The notes beneath the pieces are model-generated. The model saw only the letters and a list, made by a program, of their open reading frames with translations, ran no database searches and was not told where the DNA came from. From assembly GCA_965637545.1 (NCBI GenBank), contig OZ281497.1, positions 20,274,001 through 20,338,000 of the forward strand: 64,000 bases of DNA, read 5' to 3'. Source of the stretch: Phallusia mammillata. Lineage: Eukaryota. Positions 723-49,252 of the stretch are shown here, piece by piece. The translations under genes and the position numbers were made by a program. Within the stretch, counting starts at the first letter, position 1; the number at the start of each line of letters is the position of its first letter.

Positions 723-3700
723 ATGGAGAAGTCTGCACCACAGTCCCGGCCCAAAGGGTTTGGCATGTTTCCAAGCATGCAAACTCAGGGAGCCTCAAAG
801 GGAAGACGAATGGATGAGGAGCTGCCACCTGGTGTGCTTCCTAATCAATTTAGTGGCAATCGACCAAGCTTTGAACCAATGCCTTTTGGTCAATTTAACC
901 CATACTCTGGCAACAACAGAAACGTTCCAGGTGGACTTACAGGAGGGTTTAACTTTCCCATGTCCCCTGGACAGACTGGTTTAAGTTCCCCAATGGAAGG
1001 ACTAAGTTTCACAGGGAAAGCTTCATCTCCTGGTTCAAAGTCCACTGATTCCGGCCGCTTTTTGCCTACATCTTCTTCCTCTGGCAGCATCAACACTCCC
1101 ACCAGGATGACCCCAGAGCATATTATCCGAACTTACAGTCAAGAAAGTGTTGGAAAGTTAAAGATTGAACCTGGCCATGAGGTGAGATCATGTATTTTAG
1201 ATTTTGCTTTGGTTTTTAATTACTCTACTGTTCTTTAAATTTGTAGTATATTTAGTGCAAGTGAACTGAGTAAAGTTGTTTTGAATGCTGCTCACAATTT
1301 GAACATTTTTTGATTTGCTGATTTAATTTGCGAATCATCTATTGTTACCAGGTTTGACTTGATTTTGTTTTTGTGTGATTTTTGATTTGGTAGCAGTGTG
1401 ATCATCTCTTGCAGTGATTTGTGTAAAATTATCCAACAGAAAAACAATAAATCATTATTACCAACAGTAAGGCATGAAATTTTTGAAAAGCAGAGTTGAA
1501 ATGTGGAAGTAGATTAAACTTTTTCAATGAAACCACCTCCAATTTGCATTCATTGTCAAAATTTTTTTGTCGAACCTGTGTATTTTCCACCTGTCAAGCT
1601 GAACAAGTTGCTGGAAATTAATAGCAGAAACTTTCTTTTTAAATGTTGTATTTTTGCGTAGGCTTTTGACTTTGTGGCTTCTGATCTTACTGACTATGGT
1701 GAGATTGGACGTGGAGCATTCGGTTCAGTTAATCGAATGGTGCACAAGAAGAGCAGAACAGAAATGGCTGTGAAGCGAATTCGATCGACTGTTGATGAAA
1801 GGGAACAAAAAAGACTGTTGATGGATCTGGATGTGGTAAGTTTAGCCTTAACTACCAAGGCAACAAGAAATAGGTTTTTGGTAACTTAAGATGAACATAA
1901 ATTCGTAACTGGGATCGAAGCTGACATGTGTAGCATATGAGACAGGCAACTGTGCTTGTGATTCCACTTTCGGCGGATTCTCCACTGAGCCTGCGTAGCT
2001 CAATTGGTAGAGCTGGAGTCCCGGATTGACTCCTGTCATGGGTTCGAATCCATATGGTGGTGAATGCTTGTTGACCGGCTGATTCGGTATGGCACCTTCA
2101 ATGGGCCTGGTGTACTCTGATTTTTGGTAACTTACTTGTTAAACATGATGCTCAAAATATAAGGTTCAAATGACTAACCATTGTGGTTCTTTAAAGGTGA
2201 TGAGAAGCAGTGATTGTCCTTACATTGTAAAGTTCTATGGTGCTTTGTTCTGGGAAGGCGATTGCTGGATTTGCATGGAACTAATGGCCACATCTCTGGA
2301 CAAGTTTTACCGCTTTGTCTACCACAGACAGAGTCAGAGAATTCCAGAGGAAATTTTGGGCAAAATTGCAGTTGCGACTGTCAAAGCATTGGATTACCTA
2401 AAAGTACAAGAGAAAAGTTTTTGTCAAGATTTTTTACATTGGTGCAATGTGTTACTTGTTTGTGATAAACAATTATTTGAACTTATTGGGTATGCTCACA
2501 CAAAAAGTACATTGCAAAATCTTATTCCAGTTGTGTATCAATAGTGCTAATTGAAAAAACAGAAAGTTTGTTCCTAATAAGAACATTTTTTGGTTTGCTG
2601 TTAGCGGTTGAGTTTCAAAACACTTGTTAAATTTCGATACAAACTAGGATTTTTTATGGCAATTCCCTGTGTATGGTGTTTACAGGATTGTATTGATTTT
2701 TGTGTGACTTTAAATGACTGTTTTGCGTTTCTAGGAAAAACTTCAGATCATCCACAGGGATGTAAAGCCTTCGAACATTCTCATCGACCGGGGTGGAAAC
2801 ATTAAGCTTTGTGACTTTGGTATTAGTGGCCATCTTGTTAATTCCATTGCACGCACAAGAGATGCGGGTTGCAGACCCTACATGGCCCCTGAGAGAATTG
2901 ACACCAGCAAGTCTCGTAATGGTAAGCCATTTTGCACTATACCAAGCAACCAAAGTGATAGCTCTGTTTAAATGTTTAGGTGCTGATGTTATTTCTGTAT
3001 TAAAAATATGTGGTTTTGTAGCAAATCATATTGATTGTTTTTTTACAGCAGCAAATCGTATTGATTAAATATGCTTTTTGTCAGTGGTGTTTGTTTGGGT
3101 TTTGCATTGGCAAGTGTTTGTTAAAATATACCTCACCTATTTCTTAGTGATAATTTATTAAAGCAATGATAAACCATGTTTTCACAATGGCAAAGCATGG
3201 TTTAACTTTTAGTCACTCTTTTGTATTGTTATCATATTGCTTACCAATGCCATGCCTCACATTTATGTTCAGGATATGATGTTCGTTCAGATGTGTGGAG
3301 TCTGGGAATCACTTTAATTGAACTCGCCACTGGCAATTTTCCATATCCTAAATGGAACAATGTGTTTGATCAGCTTACACAGGTTTGCTTGTGATCACTG
3401 TTAGCAATCTTTATTTAGTTGTAATGATATAAGGTCTTTACTTGCAGCATTGTTCGTTATTGTTTCATTCTCCATGGGTTGGCAATCACCATTAGTAAAC
3501 TGTTAAGCTGTCTGTTTTATTTAAAGTCTATTGAATCTGTTTTATTTGAATGTTTTTTTACTTGGGAAATTAATGATTACATGATTTGGTTTAATCCATG
3601 AGGTCTTCTAGTTTAGGGCAATGCCACCAAAGTTTTTTGCTGTTGCACACAGGTGGCATAGATAGGATTTAGCTAACCACTCAGCCATCATGTGGAAAAA

Positions 3701-39125: not shown

Positions 39126-42100
39126 ATGTTTCAAGATGTAAGTTTGAAAAAGTTTTAAAACATGCTTTTATAATATGTATTGTATACACAGCTTGTAATA
39201 TTAGTAATATTTTATTGCAGGATAAGACACCGATTGCAGCAGATGCTGATGCTGATGCAGATATTATCTATCCAGGTATAAACTGACATAAAATGTACTG
39301 TGGTGATTATAATTGATGATGTCTGAGTACCTTTTTTATATATTTGTGAATACAGTATACCTCGGTTAATCTCCATCATATTTGACAAATAAATTATCCA
39401 CACTGGGCGAAGATCAGTTTTAGCTAAAGTCCTATCCAACCCTTTTGCCTTTTGCAAACCCTTTTTGATAAGCTTATTGTCGACCCCTTGTTTTAACTTT
39501 TGTTTTCTGCCCTGAAGTCAGTTCGTGCACTTTTGACACCTAATCTTCGATGGATTCGAATAATTTTTACAGATGGTGGATATGGTAATGTAGATGTGTA
39601 ATCTTCTTCGTTTGTCTTGATAACCTAATTAGTACTTACCCCGCTAACCTCCAAAGTGTAGAACATTTTCGTATGTTGCTGGGCACCACAAACTTAACGG
39701 TTTCTGTGATGTAATAGTGTTATGAAGGCAACAAAACATAAGTTACTTGTTTTGTACATTGCCTGGTGTACGTTTTTGCACAATGGCAGTTAGAGAATTC
39801 ACAGCCTTATGCTGTAAGAAGCAATGACGGTTGTTGCTCAAAACACCTCCAGTGGTCACGGTTTTAAACATTATCCAAACGGGACAAAATTATACAGGAC
39901 TGTTGCTGATTAGGTCATTATGGTTTCATATTTTATACTGATGAGTTAAAACCTCAACAATTACCCCATTAACCCCCTGAAATGGGTGGATTTATTAAGG
40001 ACAGCATGTAAAATTTGCCATCTATGGGTGTCAACTGTTGTGTTTAACCCTTCAGTCCCAAGATTTACCCCACTAGTCCCCTAAAATGGGTGAATTTTTT
40101 TAATAATGTTAAAATTGAATGGAATTTGGATAGCTTGTAGTAAAGTGATTGTTTAAGCCCAGTACTGATCACTGTGTTTTTCAACACCAAACTTTGTCAT
40201 GGTTATCTCTTGAAATGCAATACTTTTAACTTTGCATGTGTGGAGATCCATGAGTTTTTGTTTGCAGAATCAACTAGAGTTATAAAAGACAGTGGCTAAT
40301 ATGGGACCCAAAATAAAATAAGTGTAGGGAATATATTTACGTTTCCTAAAAGGTTATAGTGTATGTGCAATGGCAAAATGTGCTCATCCACCTTTCTAAT
40401 TTTTTTGTCCCTTTTTCCAACTACGTCACTATTCGCAAGATACCAAACATATAAGCCACTACATTGCTGAAACATGTGTTGGTGTACAAAAGTATAAACC
40501 ACTACATTGCTGAAACATGTGTTGGTGTACAAATTTGCTATTGCAACAAAAAAAATTTGTATCAGAAAAGCTAGAAATATGAACCAAAGATAACCCAAGT
40601 GTACTGTATTTGTCATTGTAAAAGGTGTAATGTACCTGCGTAGTATATAATTGTTTACAAATTTACTGTCTAAAGTTAATGGTTTAATGTAGTCTAGTGC
40701 TTTTGTGTATGTTTTGTCATTTAATGAAAGCAATTAAGTGGTACAAAGGTACTGCACCACTTTCAAGTGACTTTACAAGGTGTTTTTGTCATGCAGATGA
40801 AGTTGTCCAAGTCTTGAAAGATCAACTTTCAATAGTGAAGAAAAAAATGGACGTAAAGTTGTCACATGATGTAAAATGTGGACCAGCAATTGATACAGTT
40901 CCATTTTTTACATCTGGTAGTTCATTGGTGGAGCATGAAATTCAAGAAAAAGGTGTTAAAGAGATAGGCTGGGCAGGATTTGTTAATGGCGTGCTTGAAA
41001 ATGAACTTTCAGCCGTTGTTGGTTCGTTTGGCTCTGGAAAATCTACAATAGCAAAGCAGCTTGTTGTTCAATGCACAGAGAATGAAGATGCATGTCCAAT
41101 TTTCTTCAAATTTTCTAAAATGAATTTTGATGATAACATCTCCTTTAAACAGTTGATTAGTTTTGGCAATCCTGATATTTCACCAACCCAATGTAAAGAA
41201 GCATTTGATTGGTTTGTAAAGAACCAAAAAAAGCTTTTGTTTATTTTGGATGCATGTGATGAGGCATCCTGGTGGGGCCACATGAATGAGGAAGTTCCAC
41301 TTTGTGACTATTACAAGGAAGTACCTATTTGGCATCTTGTTGGAAATTTGTTAAACGGTCATCTTTTTCGATCCTCTCCTAAGGTGTTTACCTCTCGTTA
41401 TTCAAGCTTGTTAGGTTTACACCATTCTTTTCGCCCAACCATTTGCTATCGAGTCAACAACCTCAGCGATTATAACATCCAGCAAATTGTAATATCTCAT
41501 TCTGAACCGAATAAAAATGAGTGTGATATGTGGTCCAACATGCTAAGCTGTGGTGAAGAAATGGTTTTGCTTGGTGGTAACCCTTGGTTTCTTCAGTTTA
41601 TAATACAAAATCTTCAGTCCCCCAAAAATTCCACACTTACTGGTTGGATGTGCAGCATTGTGGAAAAAATGTGCTCTAGTTCACATTCACGCTTAAGTAG
41701 AATGCATGAAAAATTACATGACATACAGAAGCTCGCCTCCCGGGTTCTGGAATCAAATTGCAACTGGTTTGGTTTGGAGGTATTGAATGAAGTTGGTTTA
41801 GACATGGAAGCAGTACAGGATTTAGTTGTTGCTTCTCCTGGTACAAGTCATCAGAATGACAAAATTGTTTCCGAAAATATTAGGCTGCGCTTTTTTGATC
41901 CAGTTATAATGGATTACCTCATTGCTTGCCATGTAATGTCACTAAATGAAGATCAATTTGAAGGATGGCTAACAGACAAAAAGTCAAATCGACAGATTCG
42001 GTTCATTTCAGGATTACTATTTTCTAAACAAAGAAGTTAGTAACTTTGTGTTTGTCTTTAATACGTCCATCAAATATGACCTCCAAAATTTGCATTCAAG

Positions 42101-45100
42101 AATGTAATATTAATCTTCTTTTGCTTTTTTTCCTTGTTAATTGCTTGGTTAGTAACTGTGCATTCTTTTAATTTGAAGGCAGAAATTTGTGTACATAGGC
42201 GAATAAAGTTGTGCTCTGTTGTTTATAGTCCCAAGCTAATGCATTTATTAATATGTAGACCTTTGAAAGGAGAAATGATTTTTCTGAAATATGGCCATTA
42301 TTTTGAAAATAAATAACCTAGCTATTTTGTATTTCAAAGATTGATGCAGTTCAACAAGTTTAAAAGCATTTAATGCTTATTTTTTTCAAAATATCAAGAA
42401 ACAGCATGCATAATTTGTGGGCATTCTATGTCAAAAGTTACTTACTATATTATTTGCAGATGCATCTAACATTGGCAAGCAGAATATCTTTGTTTCATTT
42501 TTAAAGAAGCACAAAAAATATTTGCAAGGTAACTTTTGTTACTATTAGAATATGTTTCATAAATCAAACTGTTCAAAAAAGTATTTAACCAATTTTTATT
42601 TGAAACTTATAGACACTGGTTTCTAAATTGATTAATAGTTTTTGTGTCTTTAGATAATGTACTCCCATTGCTGGAAATTGTTTTTGAGGGTGGTCAACCG
42701 CTTTCTGAAAGGTTTGCCAATGATTTTCCTCTGTCACTAAACTTATCAAAATCAAGTCAGTTGACCTTCCACCAAGTGAAAGCAATTTGTAATTGGCTGC
42801 TCCATACCAATGTCCCCATTCAGCAATTATTACTTGATGATTGTGGTCTTGATGGCAAAAGGTTTGAACTTATTGCACAAGCAGTGGAGCAATTACAAGT
42901 AAAGGTATGAAACTTATTCTGTGTTGCTTACTTAACTTTTTGCTTGGAGTTTGGTAGCTTACCCACTAATTTAGCATACTATGCTTAAAGGTCTTATACT
43001 TGGTGTTTAAGTATTGTCTACATGTTGTTGTTTCATAAATAATATTTTATTGTTTCATAACTTTATGTTATATTCCTTTTTCGGTGCATTTTTTGTACAA
43101 AATGATCATTCTTTGTGTTAAGTTACAATATTTAGTTTTTTGAAGAATTGTTTTCAAAGCAAACCATATTCAAGTGTGATTTTTTTGGTTTGATCATGCT
43201 AGAATGTTGTTTTTAGATTGATACTATGGATATTTCAAACAATTTACTTGAAAGTGAGACAATTCTCAACATGGAATCAGAATTTTTGGAAAACCTTGAA
43301 CGGACTCTTATAATGAGCAATTGCATTATTGCTGAAAAAACTAAAAGGAACTTAAATGATGAAGAAAAAAGTCACATGAAAACAATAAATAATAAAAAAC
43401 AGGTATTTTTGCTTGACCATTAATGATTGCCATCAGTAATACTATTTTTTGTTTAGCCTGTTAAACTGTCATTTGACCCTGAGGACAGTGAAGGTAGCAA
43501 TTCAGGTGTGTGCACCACATGTTACTTTTATGAAAGAAAAGTTTAAGTTTATAACTTTTTGTAGAGTTTGATGGTAGGACATTTCTATCTGTGGAAACAA
43601 ACCTCAAAGAGGAAGAGCCTTTTGACGATGTTGAAAGCACTGAATTGAATGTGGTATGTAGGTTTTAGGTGAAAAATGTTAAATTGGATGGTATCTTGAC
43701 AGTTTCTAACCTGTGGCAATGTGGTGTATTGATTGTTTCGTATTACTCCAGATATATATACATACTCTGCCCGATTTAGCCAAATACATACTCAATTACA
43801 CACCCTGTAACCCCCTGTTTTTGTAAAATTGTAAACAATGTTAACACAATTTGACACTGTTTGTATGTCATTGTAAACACCTATAACTCTGTGTATGAAG
43901 TAACCCATAAGTTTTAGAATGTGGAAATCAATGAAGTGATAAGAACGTTTTTTTTAACCTGGATCCCAATGTAAAATAATTTAATAGTATATATCCTTTT
44001 ACAAAGAGGTTATAGTGCAATTGCAATAAACGTTAAGTAAAGATATTTATTCCTAATGTTTGTGTTTAAATAGGGTTTTATTTTATATTGGTTGTCGATT
44101 TTGTTTTTTAGAACCAAAAACTTCAGGCAAGTGCAGAGTATTTACAAGAGTGCTTTGGAAAAGGTTGGTTTTATTATTATATGTGATGTCTTCTGTATAG
44201 GTGCACCTGTCTTGCAAAACACAAGAAAGTAATAGACAGTACAATTGCTTACTTTTACAGATCCTGTTTCTTTTGGTTCAAAGTACATTAAAGGTGAACT
44301 GATTACTAGTGGAACAGCGGGATCAAAAATTCACAAGTAAAATTTTACATTACTATGACTATTTTTTTTATTTGTTTCATAGCAAAGTGATGCACAGTGG
44401 ACTGCTAAATTTCTAAACTTTCTTGTCCATATACTATTACAAAATATAAACAAGTATTTTTGCACAAATACTTCAAAACATCAACTTCGCAGGTGCAAAG
44501 GAACATGCGATAATGAACTGTATGTTACAAAAGTTCTGGACACTGATTTGTATGATTTAAAAGATGCAAAAACTGAAGTGACCTTTTTGCGCGAATGTCA
44601 AAGTGAAAACATAGTTAGGTACTACAACTTTTGCTCTGGGGTAAGTTTTAGTAAGTATGAGTTATTTTTTAACTAGCCCAACCTTGTTTACAAACAATGC
44701 TTTAAACAAATGCTAAAAACAATACTTTATGTTTATTTTAACACATGATAGATATATAATTGAACAGTCAAGCTATAATTATTTTTTTATAGTTCCAACA
44801 ATGTTTGTGTTTTATCAAGACCACTACCAATTTACAATTGCCTAATTGCTCACCAATTTGTTTATAAACGATGTTTGCTGTTCTTATTTTCAGATATGAT
44901 GCTACCTTTCTAGTTTCTGAAACAATACTTTTTTTGGTCATTTGTGCATATACATCTTGTTGTTTGCATTTTATTTGCTAAATTAACAGTTTCGTATTCC
45001 CTTAAAATCAAATACAGTCAATGCTCAAATAAATTCAGTGCCTTTTGGGGCTTTAAGTACAAATGTGTTCATATACTAAAACAAGATGCAACAAAATCAG

Positions 45101-48068
45101 TTTAAAAGCAATGTCAAAATGAAATCATGGGTAAATTGAACAGCAAATGTAATCTTCTGTATGTCATAAGTCCTTCTGAACGAGAGGTTTACAAACTGTG
45201 GGCTAACAATGCAAAATACACCGCAAGCATAAGACGTCATAAATAGTTTTGTCAGACTGTTTAAATTGATGTGTGCATTAAGTTAGAATTAATCTGGGCA
45301 TTTCAGGCACCATAAGATGTTATATATATGAGATAAACCTGTTTTTACATCAGTAATTTTGGGACAAAACCAAAAAGACACTTGGTGACTGTAATGAAAG
45401 AAGGATCTTTAATGCAACCATCATAGCTAAAAGGTTGTGCACCCCTGTTCTAAACTAACATAGTACTATTTTATATGGCATTTTTGTTGAATGAAATAAA
45501 GTCACTCTTCTTAAAATTGTGGTTAACACAGCAGTATATTGGTGGCTTTAAAAAGCTATGTGTACCGCCAACTAGTACTAATATGCCCATAAAATCATAA
45601 CATTGTGCATTGGAGCTTATATTGTATTATCCAGTCATCCCTAATATGTATTGACAAGTTTTGATGTTTAGTAAATTACTAAATCTTTACAAAAAATTTA
45701 TCGCAGAACACACCGACAACACTTTATGTTGTGATGGAAATGTGTGCCACATCTGTATATAATGTATGTATATTAGCTATAAAGTATGTGCTTAAAAGTA
45801 ATTTATAGCTTTTACATGCTACATGATTTTGTTTTTTGTTATAGTTCTTTTAAATGAATCATATAATATTGAAACATATTTCATTTATACATGTAATGTT
45901 TTTTAGTTTGTCAAAAATGGAGGTTATCTTGATAACAAAGGAAATTTGGAAACAACTGGTGCTAAAAAATACCTGAGCATTACACCACTCCAGATTGTAA
46001 AGGATGCAGTAAAGGGAGTTTTATGTCTACATGAAAAAAAATTGAGTGAGTGTCGTTGTTTTCGCACAAGTATTTTGTTGTTTAGTCATTATATGACTTA
46101 GTACATACATATTACTGAATAGAGGCTAATTAAGTAAGTATTTGAGTTTTTTTGTATCAGCAGTAAATGGTAAAAAAATGTTGTTGAAAAAACACAAATT
46201 TTTTAGAAAACTGTCAATGCCTTATGTAGCCATTTTTAAATGATCTTTGTTGTTTGTGGCCTTTTTCAGTACACCGAGACTTGAAGCCCCACAATTTCTT
46301 GGTGTCATTTGACAATCGAGTAAAAGTTGCTGATTTCGGATTCTGTCGCAAATTAAAAAATGACAAATCTTACCACCGAAGTAGTTCTCGTAGTGCAGAA
46401 ACTTTTCTTGCTCCAGAAAATCACGAGAAACTTTATGTAAGTGAAAAATTCCTTTGCTAGTGGTAGTATAGTTAATGTTTTCCTTGTGAATTGTTTTGAC
46501 TTAAAACTTTTTGTAGAAACAAAAATCAGATGTTTATGTTCTTGGGTTGTTTTTTTACTTTGTGCTGAGTGATGGTGATCATCCATTTGGTGAAGAAAAT
46601 GATCAACGACACAACATGACTAAAGGCAAAGCACCAAACCTAAACCTATTCAAAAGTAAGCTGTGGCTGTCAAATGACATGCAAGGGTGTTTCAAATAAA
46701 CTTTTTGCAGAAGAGAATGTAGAACATTACATTACTATCAGTGGCTTAATGGAATCAATGTTACAAAAAGAGGTGGATAAACGTCCCACTATACAAGAGG
46801 TGGCTATGCACCCAGCCTTGTGGGACTCCAAACAAAAGTGTGAATATCTTACTGTAAGTACTTTTGGATGTTGATTTTTGACCAGGTTTTATTTTTTGTT
46901 GAAACTGACAAATAGTGTTATAGTAAGAAGAAAACAGTATATTGTTCTTCTAGTCATTTTGTCATATTTTTAGACTATAATTCATCTAAAAATATTTACG
47001 TAGCAATGGTGCAAATTTTCAGTACAACGATTACAGGTGCTGGAGAAACCACACTATTTGGCATCTTACACTGTTATACATCATGCTTTGAACATAAAGC
47101 ATAGTCCAATGTACAACATAGATTGCTGTATTTAAAGCTTGTGTCCAAAAACAAAACATAGTTTTAAGCCCAAAATGCTTACAAAAAGTCTGGTGCAAAT
47201 TGTAGTTAATTTAAACTGAAGAAATAACATTCAGGATTTGCACAAATTCATTGAAGAAAAGAAAAATTTAACCTCTGATCTCCTTGAACAAATGAAGAAA
47301 TATCCTGCAAATTTGTTGAGGGATGGTGATAAAACTGAAGAGGAGTTCAAAATTTTAAAAAGTAGTTTGCCAAAATCTGTTCTTGAAGACAAAGCACATC
47401 CAGTAATTTCATGTGAAACAGTGGTGGACTTTCTTCGAGTATTCAGGAACAAGGTAGGTTTCTTAAGAGGGTCATGTTTTAGTTTCTTATTTTCATGAAG
47501 CTAGCTCATGCACTTTTGTCATAAACACGGCTCAATAAAATATGACAAATATTAGAACTATATCGGTACCCAGTGGTGGGATTCAGCCAGTTCGCACTGG
47601 TTCTATATCATAAAATTTTATCTGATCAGCGAACCGTTAGCATTACTGGTTACTGTCAATGAATACAGTCAATAAACTGGCTGAAAAATATGACTTTTGT
47701 GATAGAACCGGCTTACAAAAAATTTGAAACCCACAACCATGTAAAAAAATAATAGGAAACAGTTTTGTACAAGAGTATAAAGTTGCATTTGAATGTTTTT
47801 TTTTGTTTACTTTATTTAGGTTAAATTAACTACCAACAGTAATGATCTTACAAAATTTGCTTGGTAAAAACAAATCTATTTCTGTTTTAAGAAAAGCCAC
47901 GGAAATCTCACTACTGCTGAGAAAATGGAATTTGGGCACAATGAAACTAATGGCTGGGACAATTTTGTGGACGTGTTTTTAAAACCCTATCCCCAGCTTC
48001 TTGTACATTTGTATGATCTTTTTAGGGGAAAAGCAATTGAAAATCGTACTAAGTACTATTCTGCATAA
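39126..48068 (+). CDS. NACHT-LRR (NLR) fused to an IRE1-like Ser/Thr kinase and KEN ribonuclease domain, 18 exons, ~1088 aa
   Basis: Exons 39126-39137, 39221-39275, 40797-42035, 42460-42528, 42654-42904, 43217-43402, 43457-43505, 43565-43653, 44112-44163, 44261-44336, 44493-44640, 45707-45763, 45907-46045, 46270-46436, 46517-46655, 46711-46853, 47235-47453, 47892-48068 sum to 3267 nt with no internal stop and matching phases at all 17 GT-AG introns. The first two small exons are the least certain. Confidence 0.85.
39472..40399 (+). mobile_element. Second copy of the Helitron/Helentron-like family (intron 2 of the NLR-kinase-KEN gene)
   Basis: Shares ACAGATGGT(A/G)GATATGGT(T/A)ATGTAGATGTG and the 3' block TTATAAAAGACAGTG...ATATGGGACCCAA...AAAATAAGTGTAGGGAATATATT...GGTTATAGTG...CCACC(C/T)TTCTA with 13179-14373. 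Confidence 0.7.
40797..42035 (+). CDS. NACHT NTPase module (single large exon) of the NLR-kinase-KEN gene
   Basis: Walker A GSFGSGKST, Walker B LLFILDACDE, sensor-1 VFTSR, GxP motif GGNPWFL, winged-helix motif FFDPVIMDYLIA. Confidence 0.9.
42654..43402 (+). CDS. Short RI-like LRR region of the NLR-kinase-KEN gene (2 exons)
   Basis: LSLNLSKSSQL, IQQLLLDDCGLDGKRFELIAQAV, IDTMDISNNLL, TLIMSNCII: about 3-4 degenerate LxxLxLxxN/CxL units. Confidence 0.7.
44261..46853 (+). CDS. IRE1-type protein kinase domain (7 exons) of the fusion gene
   Basis: YVTKVL (beta3 Lys), KTEV (alphaC Glu), YVVMEMC, IHRDLKPHNFLV, KVADFGFCRKL, FLAPE, SDVYVLGLFFYFVLSDGDHPFG, RPTIQEVAMHPALW. The last two closely parallel IRE1 (YYVISEGSHPFG; RPSAKHVLKHPFFW). 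Confidence 0.9.
47235..48068 (+). CDS. KEN (IRE1/RNase L-type) ribonuclease domain (2 exons) of the fusion gene
   Basis: VVDFLRVFRNK|KSHGNLTTAEKMEFG...FVDVFLKPYPQLLVHLY aligns by eye with IRE1 [25 protein letters not shown]...FVCYFTSRFPHLLAHTY. Confidence 0.85.
47571..47741. mobile_element. hAT MITE, inverted paralog of 5267-5443, in the last intron of the KEN domain
   Basis: Begins CAGTGGTGGGATTCAGCC; the interior is the reverse complement of 5267-5443 with substitutions; the right TIR is degenerate. Confidence 0.75.
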
Positions 48069-49252
48069 ATGTAATTGTCATGTATACAATATTCAGATGC
48101 TCTTATTTAGTTTAAAAAATGTAGAGTAATTTGTTTAGGATTTAAAATATCCTTGCAAAATTGTGGACTATCACAAAGAATATTTTCTAAGCCAAACAAT
48201 TGTTTCTGTGCAATTACTTTGCTTCCAAAGCACTAAAAATTTTGTATTTTTTTACAATATATTGGGTCAAACCCAAAATCAAATATGTGCACTTAATTTG
48301 TTTTCTCCACTGTTTAATTGTTGAACTGTATTGTGATTAAGTGCCCATTTGATACTACTACATAGAAACATATTTGGGTAATGTACCACAAAAAGTTCAG
48401 GACACAACTGCGAAAACCTAGTGGTTATAAATTCAGTAAAAGAACAGTAAAAGGGAGTAAATAAAGGTAAAAATCACAGCAGCTGTACCTAATGAGGGGA
48501 AAATGGCCTAAAAAGGCTGCAATCCGGCCACAGAATCGAGTGGCCTCAAGGGCAACAAATGGATGGATAGTGGCCATATCATGATTAGCTAATATCTCTA
48601 TGCACTTATTGGCAGAAAGTTCAAATGAGTTTCAATCCACTTTTTATACTTTTTTATGCGGCATTACGATGTGAAATTTATTTGTTTATTTGAAAGTCTA
48701 AAAACATTCGGTTATTTTAGGTTTGGGATTTAAATGATGGCAAGAGTCTAATCGCAGTGATTGTACCTATAATTTGTTTACATTGGTAAATAACGTGTGT
48801 TTTTTTCTATCTTGTGGTTCTGCTGCTCCAGCGTTTTGTTATTGTAATTTTTGTAAATTTGATACACTGTAGCCAATAAACTGTCCATTAACTTGACGAT
48901 GTGGTTGACTTAAGCAGGTTAAAGAAAACATGCAGACTTCTAACACAGATGTATTTGACCTTTTTTGTGTAGGATGTTGAGAATTATTGCTCTCACTGTT
49001 GCATTTGTTCAATAACGGATCTTTAGACTACACACGACTCTGGAGTTGTAGTTGTATGCTGGGCTGCCACTACTTGAGATTTTTCCCAAGATCTTGGGAT
49101 TTTAGTCGTTAGTTTGGGATCTTGGGAAAAACCTTGAAACCTTGGGACGAGTGATAAAGAATAAAATAATACAAAACGGATCTGAATTACCATAGACCTG
49201 AGTCACCTGACTGTCGAGAGTGGACCAATACAAGTTTGGAGGCCCATTTCTG

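What the first reader, a model, noticed from the sequence alone, without database searches (positions are those of the whole stretch)
39126..48068. NLR-kinase-ribonuclease fusion: NACHT-LRR sensor wired to an IRE1/RNase L-type effector
Seen: one continuous 18-exon frame (~1088 aa) ordered short acidic leader, NACHT, short LRR, acidic linker, kinase, KEN; no TM, signal peptide or ankyrin repeats. Known: kinase-KEN modules become RNases only on dimer/oligomer formation, driven by a luminal stress sensor in IRE1 or 2-5A-binding ankyrins in RNase L. NACHT proteins oligomerise on ligand sensing, and animal NLRs normally use N-terminal death-fold effectors. I know of no described animal NLR with a C-terminal kinase-RNase. 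Inference: a cytosolic immune receptor converting pathogen sensing directly into RNA cleavage (translation shutdown, antiviral or anti-TE decay, or cell death), a single-chain analogue of OAS-RNase L and of bacterial STAND-nuclease defence proteins.
Basis: partly seen in the sequence, partly recalled or inferred. Interest (0 to 1): 0.95.

Follow-up and report, generated by a model that had tools for sequence, protein, structure and literature searches.

The report
NLR fused to IRE1-like kinase-RNase
A probable sea-squirt gene joins an innate-immune NACHT sensor module to an IRE1/RNase L-type kinase-ribonuclease in one spliced reading frame, a domain combination I found described nowhere, which suggests a receptor that could cut RNA directly once it oligomerises.

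Summary
On the + strand, 17 GT..AG exons (39126-48068) give one open frame of 1062 aa. The order is a short acidic leader, an NLR-type NACHT/NOD module, three to four LRR-like repeats, an acidic linker, an IRE1-family kinase and a KEN (HEPN) RNase domain.

- **Domains.** NACHT is solid (Pfam 2.6e-18; AF2 model matches NOD2/NLRP3). Kinase plus KEN match an IRE1 profile built here as one domain (204.9 bits). A KEN-only profile scores 33.3 bits against at most 11.4 in 5000 shuffles.
- **Transcripts.** Spliced RNA contigs join the last LRR-like exon through the linker to the first kinase exon, and join the later kinase exons to KEN. No AUG lies between LRR and kinase hinge.
- **Gaps.** No RNA junction was seen for NACHT exon > exon 4, exons 9-12 or the 5' exons.
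- **Catalytic residues.** Walker A/B, K/E/HRD/DFG and R-N-x3-H are kept. The IRE1 catalytic Tyr is Ile.
- **Relatives.** The nearest NACHT relatives are all tunicate NLRs, and none of 155 carries KEN. No paper found describes NACHT-kinase-KEN; NACHT fusions with other HEPN families are known.

Function (oligomerisation-triggered RNA cleavage) is inferred, not shown. I class it as a new variant of known kinds.

The parts
39126..39137 (+). Exon 1: putative start ATG, MFQD, donor GTAAGT
   Evidence: Sequence only. No RNA was laid here.
39221..39275 (+). Exon 2: acidic leader (DKTPIAADADADADIIYP), ends in phase 1
   Evidence: Its phase fits the NACHT exon acceptor. Inferred, no RNA evidence.
40797..42035 (+). 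Exon 3: NACHT/NOD module (aa 23-435). Walker A GSFGSGKST 98-106, Walker B LLFILDACDE 169-178, sensor-1 VFTSR 219-223.
   Evidence: Pfam NACHT 2.6e-18. AF2 pLDDT 85.6, best PDB matches NOD2, NLRP3, NAIP5/NLRC4. RNA contigs cover 41600-41981.
42654..42904 (+). Exon 4: post-NOD, LRR-like repeats (aa 436-519)
   Evidence: BLASTP collinear with tunicate NLRs across the exon 3/4 junction. RNA contig 42652-42839. No Pfam LRR hit.
43217..43402 (+). Exon 5: last LRR-like repeats (aa 520-581)
   Evidence: Homology to NLR tails up to aa 555-585. RNA joint 43402>43457.
43457..44163 (+). Exons 6-8 (43457-43505, 43565-43653, 44112-44163): acidic linker, aa 582-644
   Evidence: RNA joints 43505>43565, 43653>44112, 44163>44261 in contigs of runs X3 and X2. 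9-10 D/E per 30 aa.
44261..46853 (+). Exons 9-15 (44261-44336, 44493-44640, 45707-45754, 45907-46045, 46270-46436, 46517-46655, 46711-46853): IRE1-family kinase. G-loop 660-666, K683, E698, HRD 783-785, DFG 803-805, APE 829-831, GDHPFG 857-862, HPALW 917-921.
   Evidence: IRE1 profile hit aa 645-1052, 204.9 bits. PDB phmmer of exon 46517-46654 hits IRE1 only; exon 46713-46853 has IRE1 on top. RNA joints 46045>46270 and 46853>47235. Exons 10-11 have no RNA cover.
47235..47453 (+). Exon 16: first part of KEN, ends ...VVDFLRVFRNK (R1002, N1003). Ile989 stands at the IRE1 catalytic-Tyr column.
   Evidence: KEN-only IRE1 profile 33.3 bits against at most 11.4 in 5000 shuffles. RNA contigs 47235-47453 with a loose end that equals the start of exon 17.
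47892..48068 (+). Exon 17: rest of KEN (KSH1007..., FVDVFLKPYPQLLVHLY) and stop TAA 48066-48068
   Evidence: Pfam Ribonuc_2-5A positions 92-117, E 0.12-0.16. IRE1 profile alignment.
48460..48465 (+). First AATAAA after the stop (possible poly(A) signal)
   Evidence: Pattern only.

Best explanation
This is one real, expressed gene of an animal, very probably a tunicate. It encodes a cytosolic 1062-aa protein built from an NLR-type NACHT/NOD NTPase, three to four LRR-like repeats, an acidic linker of about 60 aa, an IRE1-family protein kinase and a KEN (HEPN) endoribonuclease.

Proposed mechanism:
1. The NOD module is held off in the resting state. It oligomerises on nucleotide exchange when a ligand or a disturbance is sensed through the LRR-like region.
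2. This brings the C-terminal kinase-KEN units side by side.
3. As in IRE1 and RNase L, juxtaposition (with nucleotide binding or trans-autophosphorylation of the Ser-rich activation loop) assembles the RNase-active dimer or oligomer.
4. The R1002-N1003-x3-H1007 site then cuts RNA.
5. The outcome is translational arrest, antiviral or anti-transposon RNA decay, or cell death.

Shown here: the frame, the domains, the motifs, expression, and splicing across the LRR-linker-kinase junction. Inferred: activation by oligomerisation, RNase activity, and the immune role.
For: - **Single frame.** 17 GT..AG exons.
- **RNA junctions.** Contigs from four runs are exon-restricted, with zero depth in the long introns. 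They show joints 43402>43457, 43505>43565, 43653>44112, 44163>44261, 46045>46270, 46853>47235 and 47453>47892. The two contigs of runs X3 and X2 overlap on exon 7 and together link the LRR-like exon to the exon that encodes the kinase G-loop.
- **NLR half is one unit.** Exons 3-5 are collinear with single tunicate NLR proteins: model 96-555 vs Clavelina P0007 155-654 at 6e-36, and 52-585 vs P0012.
- **No separate start.** No Met lies between aa 574 and 728, so a separate kinase-KEN cistron has no start in these exons.
- **NACHT.** Pfam 2.6e-18; AF2 pLDDT 85.6 with NOD2/NLRP3/NAIP5 as best folds.
- **Kinase-KEN.** One-domain match to a 45-sequence IRE1 profile, 204.9 bits. The profile's sources are verified as IRE1 by Pfam and by source names. 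KEN alone scores 33.3 bits against at most 11.4 in 5000 shuffles.
- **IRE1 type.** The PDB hits of exon 46517-46654 are IRE1 only.
- **Motifs kept**. In yeast Ire1 the His gives at least 3e5-fold and the Tyr hydroxyl about tenfold (PMC3149027).
- **Context.** Ascidian NLRs are reported to lack N-terminal effector domains (PMC11508797). Tunicate NACHT relatives carry other C-terminal modules: Pkinase in P0055, BIR in P0019.
Against: - No RNA junction was seen for exon 3>4, 4>5, 9>10, 10>11 or 11>12, and exons 10-11 have no RNA cover. The 5' exons and the start codon are inferred.
- One contig (X4) retains the 55-nt intron 14, which would truncate the protein before KEN.
- The IRE1 general-base Tyr is Ile989, the SDR stretch at the KEN start is not kept, and the first Gly of the G-loop is Thr.
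- The kinase-KEN sits on a very long branch of 7.5 substitutions per site. That could mean relaxed constraint.
- Only one relative above 30% identity exists for the NACHT exon (P0001, 49%). Its 3-kb contig says nothing about a kinase.
- No experiment bears on ligand, oligomerisation or RNase activity.
Confidence: 0.6

Rival explanations
1. There are two adjacent genes (or a tunicate operon): an NLR that ends after exon 5, and a separate cytosolic IRE1-like kinase-RNase. The joined contigs would reflect a minor read-through or chimeric transcript, so no fusion protein of consequence is made.
For: Tunicates have operons and spliced-leader trans-splicing (general knowledge). No RNA junction was seen for NACHT exon > exon 4. 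Retention of intron 5 would end the frame 6 codons after exon 5, giving an NLR-only product. RNA depth is low, 3-9.
Against: The cis-spliced joints from exon 5 to exon 9 keep the frame open with no stop. There is no AUG between aa 574 and 728, so the kinase N-lobe has no start of its own in the observed exons. Exon 5 is NLR-homologous and exon 9 is the kinase G-loop, so the joints cross the domain boundary itself.
Confidence: 0.12
2. The fusion gene is real but the C-terminal module is not an active RNase. It would be a pseudo-enzyme scaffold or kinase-only signalling domain (NLR-kinase signalling, like the NACHT-Pkinase proteins of Clavelina), or a young lineage-specific fusion drifting toward loss.
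For: Ile stands at the catalytic Tyr column, the SDR stretch is lost, and the branch is very long. Without the RNKKSH stretch the KEN profile score falls to 12.3 bits. An intron-14-retaining form exists. No orthologue was seen in annotated ascidians.
Against: R-N-x3-H, the determinant of HEPN/KEN catalysis, is intact. In yeast Ire1 the Tyr hydroxyl is worth only about tenfold. All 17 exons are intact and the gene is expressed, and a sibling copy or allele is also spliced correctly. The kinase catalytic residues are all kept.
Confidence: 0.22
3. Assembly artefact: the NLR half and the kinase-RNase half come from different loci and were joined by mis-assembly.
For: Only the window's own assembly and DNA runs that may be its source hold the stretch. 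A sibling copy exists.
Against: Spliced RNA contigs from independent RNA runs bridge the boundary exon by exon. DNA runs hold 97-98% of the sampled words of 40800-46800. There are no N runs. Composition is even across the locus.
Confidence: 0.03

Closest known systems
IRE1 (ERN1/ERN2, yeast Ire1p)
   Same: The kinase is directly followed by a KEN RNase. IRE1-specific C-lobe signatures are present (GDHPFG, KRPT..HP.lW, DFLRvfRNKksH, yPqLLvhlY). K/E/HRD/DFG and R-N-x3-H are kept, and the activation loop is Ser-rich. The model matches an IRE1 profile as a single domain.
   Different: There is no lumenal sensor and no TM segment; a NACHT-LRR module sits upstream instead. The catalytic Tyr is Ile. 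Best identity is about 30% and the branch is very long, outside all canonical IRE1 sampled.
RNase L (OAS-RNase L pathway)
   Same: Both are cytosolic kinase-fold plus KEN proteins whose RNase would be switched on by ligand-driven self-association of an N-terminal sensor. Both suggest an innate-immune logic.
   Different: The sensor here is NACHT-LRR, not 2-5A-binding ankyrin repeats. The kinase keeps all catalytic residues, whereas RNase L is a pseudokinase (general knowledge). Exon-wise PDB searches hit IRE1 and not RNase L. A direct phylogenetic test was not possible because no RNase L sequence was available in the sandbox.
Animal NLRs (NOD1/2, NLRC4, NLRP3; ascidian NACHT-LRR proteins)
   Same: It has a NACHT/NOD module with Walker A/B, WH and HD2. 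The best folds are NOD2, NLRP3 and NAIP5/NLRC4. The nearest sequences are NLRs of Styela, Phallusia, Ciona and Clavelina. Like those, it lacks an N-terminal death-fold.
   Different: It carries an enzymatic effector at the C-terminus, after a very short LRR-like stretch. Known animal NLRs signal through N-terminal CARD, PYD, DEATH or BIR.
NACHT-HEPN fusions of the CXorf38 and DZIP3 families (Anantharaman et al. 2013, PMC3710099)
   Same: An animal NACHT NTPase sits in one protein with an Rx4-6H HEPN RNase domain. The authors proposed that these link sensing to RNA degradation.
   Different: The HEPN family is different (KEN, circularly permuted, always kinase-attached), and an active-looking kinase lies between NACHT and RNase. 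That survey's table lists no NACHT fusion for KEN.
Bacterial STAND/NLR-related defence proteins with nuclease effectors (Avs, bNACHT)
   Same: A STAND NTPase sensor is fused to a nucleic-acid-cutting effector, with activation by oligomerisation (general knowledge; bNACHT preprint listed).
   Different: Those proteins are prokaryotic, their effectors are usually N-terminal and of other folds, and they carry no kinase-KEN. The likeness is analogy, not homology of the effector.

Membership tests
Animal NLR (NACHT-LRR) family | NACHT NTPase with Walker A and Walker B | tested here: met
   Pfam PF05729 66.9 bits against a cut-off of 26.7. GSFGSGKST 98-106 and LLFILDACDE 169-178.
Animal NLR (NACHT-LRR) family | NOD fold: NBD followed by helical, winged-helix and HD2 subdomains | tested here: met
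   AF2 pLDDT 85.6, pTM 0.86. Foldseek best hits are NOD2 at 5.9e-15 and NLRP3 at TMq 0.74, then NAIP5 and NLRC4. Atlas neighbours carry NACHT, WHD_NOD2 and NLRC4_HD2.
Animal NLR (NACHT-LRR) family | C-terminal leucine-rich repeats | tested here: inconclusive
   No Pfam LRR hit on exons 4 and 5, even at E 10. By eye there are about 3.5 repeats of 28-29 aa of the RI type (aa 459-570). The region is homologous to the post-NOD tails of tunicate NLRs, one of which (P0067) has Pfam LRR_6 next to the aligned stretch.
Animal NLR (NACHT-LRR) family | N-terminal death-fold (CARD/PYD/DEATH) or BIR effector | tested here: not met
   Only about 95 aa precede the P-loop, and no family hits them. The upstream exons are inferred. 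Ascidian NLRs are reported to lack this domain in general (PMC11508797).
IRE1 family | Protein kinase domain directly followed by a KEN domain, IRE1-type sequence | tested here: met
   Single-domain match aa 645-1052 to a 45-sequence IRE1 profile, 204.9 bits. PDB hits of exon 46517-46654 are IRE1 only.
IRE1 family | KEN catalytic set (yeast Y1043, R1056, N1057, H1061) | tested here: inconclusive
   R1002, N1003 and H1007 are kept. The Tyr column holds Ile989. In yeast the Tyr hydroxyl is worth about tenfold and the His at least 3e5-fold.
IRE1 family | Lumenal stress-sensing domain and a single TM segment | tested here: not met
   The best 19-residue hydropathy mean is 1.2. The N-terminal half is NACHT-LRR. 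True IRE1 ORFs show the PQQ-like lumenal part.
RNase L | N-terminal ankyrin repeats that bind 2-5A | tested here: not met
   No ankyrin hit in any exon scanned. The region upstream of the kinase is NACHT-LRR plus the acidic linker.
RNase L | Pseudokinase plus KEN closer to RNase L than to IRE1 | tested here: inconclusive
   Exon-wise PDB searches list IRE1 and never RNase L. The kinase keeps K/E/HRD/DFG. No tree including RNase L could be built.
Pfam Ribonuc_2-5A (PF06479) | Score above the gathering cut-off of 23.3 bits on the domain | not testable with these tools
Exon 17 alone gives 12.5-12.9 bits at the right profile positions, 92-117. My own KEN-only IRE1 profile gives 33.3 bits.
HEPN superfamily | Rx4-6H motif at the end of helix 3 | tested here: met
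   R1002-N-K-K-S-H1007 is Rx4H. The motif definition is from PMC3710099.

The most novel reading that the evidence does not exclude
Tunicates, whose NLRs lack death-fold effectors, evolved NLRs that carry their effector at the C-terminus. This one would be a self-contained 'sense-and-cut' receptor: NACHT oligomerisation directly switches on an IRE1-derived RNase. That would be an independent, single-chain counterpart of the vertebrate OAS-RNase L pathway. It might even be a relative of the cytosolic kinase-KEN lineage from which RNase L arose in the sister group of tunicates.
Probability: 0.3. Interest if true: 0.9.

Novelty: new variant of a known kind. Interest (0 to 1): 0.78.

Why it matters
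Kinase-KEN RNases are known with only two kinds of switch: an ER-lumenal stress sensor (IRE1) and 2-5A-binding ankyrins (RNase L). A third switch, a STAND/NLR oligomerisation motor, would show that the module is a portable, proximity-activated effector.

It would also give animal NLR biology its first receptor with a built-in RNase of this type. That bears on an open question, namely how ascidian NLRs, which lack CARD/PYD/DEATH domains, signal at all.

It offers a eukaryotic parallel to bacterial STAND-nuclease defence proteins as well.

The idea is directly testable: express the kinase-KEN part, force oligomerisation, assay RNA cleavage, and change His1007.

Tried and rejected
1. **Spliced protein not submitted.** The 1062-aa protein has no reference, so it could not be handed to Pfam, the protein databases, AlphaFold or the Atlas. 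I left those steps out. I worked exon by exon with the tools and full-length only inside scripts.
2. **KEN exons alone.** They hit nothing relevant: PDB phmmer, Atlas, and the 5.8-billion-protein search (no candidate).
3. **Scaffold alignment.** Aligning the exons to a metagenomic IRE1 segment, to make a searchable profile, gave a scrambled MAFFT alignment. I dropped it.
4. **Related species.** P0001's contig (L001, 3 kb) holds only the NACHT exon, so it cannot show whether the related species has the fusion.
5. **Literature.** The combinations NACHT + Ribonuc_2-5A, NLR + Ribonuc_2-5A and kinase extension nuclease + NOD-like receptor gave no paper.
6. **Tree.** The window's kinase-KEN is too long a branch to place, and RNase L sequences could not be brought into the sandbox.
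7. **18th exon.** The search of intron 2 gave only a weak candidate, 39522-39584.
8. **Pseudogene reading.** Rejected: no stop or frameshift in 17 exons, the gene is expressed, and it is spliced.
Full report
**What is in the sequence.**

The region is AT-rich (GC 0.28-0.39), and the window has no N. Six-frame reading shows a 447-codon open stretch (40697-42040) and a string of short open stretches downstream on the + strand.

I placed splice sites by hand and checked them by script. Fifteen GT..AG exons from 40797 to 48068 give one frame of 1039 codons without a stop. Two small upstream exons fit the phase of the NACHT exon acceptor: 39126-39137 (ATG TTT CAA GAT | GTAAGT) and 39221-39275. With them the model has 17 exons and 1062 aa.

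I found no convincing extra exon. Intron sizes are 54-1521 nt. The first AATAAA lies about 390 nt after the stop.

**Transcript evidence.**

RNA runs of the same organism hold part of the stretch. I laid four of them on 41600-47599. The contigs are confined to exons, with depth 0 over 42000-42599, 43000-43199 and 43800-43999.

The joints seen, with their canonical GT..AG cuts, are:
- 43402>43457 and 43505>43565, in one contig of run X3;
- 43653>44112 and 44163>44261, in one contig of run X2 that overlaps the former on exon 7;
- 46045>46270, in X2 and X4;
- 46853>47235, in X2 and X4;
- a loose end after 47453 whose letters are the first bases of exon 17 (47892).

Not seen joined are exon 3>4, 4>5, 9>10, 10>11 and 11>12. 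Exons 10 and 11 have no cover at this low depth (3-9).

One X4 contig runs through the 55-nt intron 14, which would stop the frame after 14 codons. One X2 contig comes from a sibling copy or divergent allele. It is about 88% alike in exon 14 and 98-100% alike in exons 15-16, and it is spliced at 46436>46517 and 46655>46711.

**Do the two halves belong to one protein?**

Three arguments bear on this.
1. Exons 3-5 align as one collinear block with single tunicate NLR proteins across both exon junctions. Model 96-555 matches Clavelina P0007 155-654 at 6e-36, 77-584 matches Phallusia P0003, and 52-585 matches P0012. So exon 5 is part of the NLR unit.
2. Exon 9 encodes the start of the kinase N-lobe according to the IRE1 profile. 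The RNA joints therefore run from an NLR exon through the linker into a kinase exon, in frame.
3. There is no Met between aa 574 and 728. A separate kinase-KEN cistron would have no start codon in the observed exons.

I put the fusion at about 0.85.

**The NLR half.**

Pfam NACHT scores 2.6e-18 on exon 3. Walker A, Walker B and sensor-1 are present. An AlphaFold2 model of the exon, built on 36 aligned sequences, has pLDDT 85.6 and pTM 0.86. Its best PDB matches are NOD2, NLRP3 (TMq 0.74 to 8ej4_A) and NAIP5/NLRC4. Atlas neighbours are NACHT/WHD_NOD2/NLRC4_HD2 clusters.

A search of 1.84 billion cluster representatives gave 135 hits. Only one was above 30% identity: P0001 at 49%, a 3-kb genomic Logan contig holding just this exon. 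The named top hits are all tunicate: Styela, Phallusia, Ciona and Clavelina. The organism is therefore most likely a tunicate.

The 'LRR' is short, about 3.5 RI-type repeats by eye, and it is not recognised by Pfam. I rate it inconclusive.

**The kinase-KEN half.**

Exon by exon, Pfam sees Pkinase in exon 13 (2.6e-12) and more weakly in exon 10 (E 0.0031) and exon 15 (E 0.05-0.07); Ribonuc_2-5A appears only at E 0.12-0.16 on the last exon. PDB phmmer with exon 14 returns 16 hits, all IRE1 (best 1.6e-4). With exon 15 the top 15 hits are IRE1, aligned over KRPT..HP.lW..k.e.L. Exons 13 and 10 hit generic kinases. The two KEN exons alone hit nothing.

To test the whole domain I needed IRE1 sequences in the sandbox. 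I scanned metagenome contigs with a back-translated DLLRxxRNKxxH[YF]xxLP pattern, which gave 120 loci. Of these, 118 carry the motif in an ORF. Four long ORFs are IRE1 by Pfam, with Pkinase about 1e-40, Ribonuc_2-5A 1e-37 to 1e-46, and a PQQ-like lumenal part.

Results with profiles built from these sequences:
- tblastn of the model's last 149 aa aligns over nearly its full length with their KEN domains, E down to 2.4e-6.
- A profile of 33 non-redundant kinase-KEN segments scores the model at 176.9 bits.
- A profile of 45 segments, including 12 named metazoan IRE1, scores 204.9 bits as one domain, aa 645-1052.
- A KEN-only profile gives 33.3 bits, against a maximum of 11.4 among 5000 shuffles. 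With the RNKKSH stretch masked it gives 12.3 bits.

The KEN call therefore rests mainly on two hallmark blocks in the right order and spacing: VVDFLRVFRNKKSH and FVDVFLKPYPQLLVHLY.

**Active-site reading**.

The kinase keeps K683, E698, HRD 783-785, DFG 803-805 and APE 829-831, and it has a Ser-rich activation loop. Its G-loop is TSGTAGS, so the first Gly is lost.

KEN keeps R1002, N1003 and H1007, an Rx4H HEPN motif. The motif is split by intron 16. The column of the yeast Y1043 general base holds Ile989, and the SDR stretch at the KEN start is not kept. In yeast Ire1, H1061 contributes at least 3e5-fold and the Y1043 hydroxyl about tenfold (PMC3149027). RNase activity is therefore plausible but not assured.

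**Relationship to IRE1.**

In a quick ML tree the window's kinase-KEN lies outside all 45 IRE1 sequences on a 7.5 substitutions/site branch, and its place is unresolved. It is a highly diverged member of the IRE1/RNase L family, not a recent copy of the housekeeping IRE1. I could not include RNase L.

**Is the architecture known?**

- None of the 155 NACHT relatives fetched has a KEN: the best score is 6.8 bits, against 33.3 for the window.
- One Clavelina protein (P0055) has NACHT plus a generic Pkinase, which scores only 39.7 bits on the IRE1 profile. Another (P0019) has NACHT plus BIR.
- The best 120 IRE1-like proteins listed all have Pkinase and Ribonuc_2-5A without NACHT, as expected for orthologues.
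- Papers: no paper holds NACHT with Ribonuc_2-5A, NLR with Ribonuc_2-5A, or 'kinase extension nuclease' with NOD-like receptor.
- The HEPN survey (PMC3710099) lists KEN fused to kinase, ankyrin, CCCH, UBI and BRCT, and solo KEN expansions in Oikopleura, but no NACHT fusion. It does describe NACHT fused to the CXorf38 and DZIP3 HEPN families in cnidarians and cephalochordates, with the same functional idea.
- A 2024 survey states that ascidian NLRs lack N-terminal effector domains (PMC11508797).
It is unchecked, but it fits a pattern of C-terminal effectors on tunicate NACHT modules.

**Limits.**

- The architecture search from the KEN side could not be run, because the spliced protein cannot be submitted.
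- The protein databases evidently lack this species.
- The absence of relatives is therefore weak evidence.
- Function is inferred from the known behaviour of NLRs (ligand-driven oligomerisation) and of IRE1/RNase L (RNase switched on by self-association). This is established knowledge of those families, not something tested here.

**Verdict.**

Noticed in passing
window 47567-47597: A 31-nt stretch inside intron 16 is matched by very abundant RNA contigs (depth 130-350 in three runs) whose flanks do not fit the window. It is probably a 31-mer shared with an abundant transcript or repeat elsewhere.
   Followed up: no
window 46656-46710: One RNA contig (run X4) retains the 55-nt intron 14. The frame would stop after 14 codons, giving a form without the kinase end and without KEN.
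   Followed up: partly
window 46399-47453 (RNA contig 8 of run X2): A sibling copy or divergent allele is expressed and correctly spliced. It is about 88% alike in exon 14, 98% in exon 15 and 100% in exon 16. This uneven divergence hints at a paralogue, gene conversion or a hypervariable exon.
   Followed up: partly
window 2744-2893 (+): tblastn of the HRD/DFG part of the model hits here at 36% identity, E 1e-5. This is another protein kinase gene near the start of the window.
   Followed up: no
window 40440-40545: A near-tandem duplication of about 45 nt lies inside the 1521-nt intron 2.
   Followed up: no
P0055, P0019, P0026 (Clavelina and other tunicate proteins): Tunicate NACHT relatives carry other added modules: NACHT + generic Pkinase (P0055), NACHT + BIR (P0019) and TIR + NACHT (P0026). 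This suggests lineage-specific shuffling of effectors onto NACHT.
   Followed up: partly
L056:17-4426 (metagenome contig): A protist IRE1 with C-terminal CCCH zinc fingers, an architecture that the HEPN survey also mentions.
   Followed up: no
window 40799-42034 (AF2 model m94ba2cffcf7a): The predicted NOD module superposes best on active-state NLR structures: NLRP3 disk 8ej4_A at TMq 0.74, and NAIP5/NLRC4. It fits ADP-bound closed forms less well. The usual WHD His of the F.H..QEF motif appears to be Asp (FFDPVIMDYL). This may be a modelling matter.
   Followed up: no
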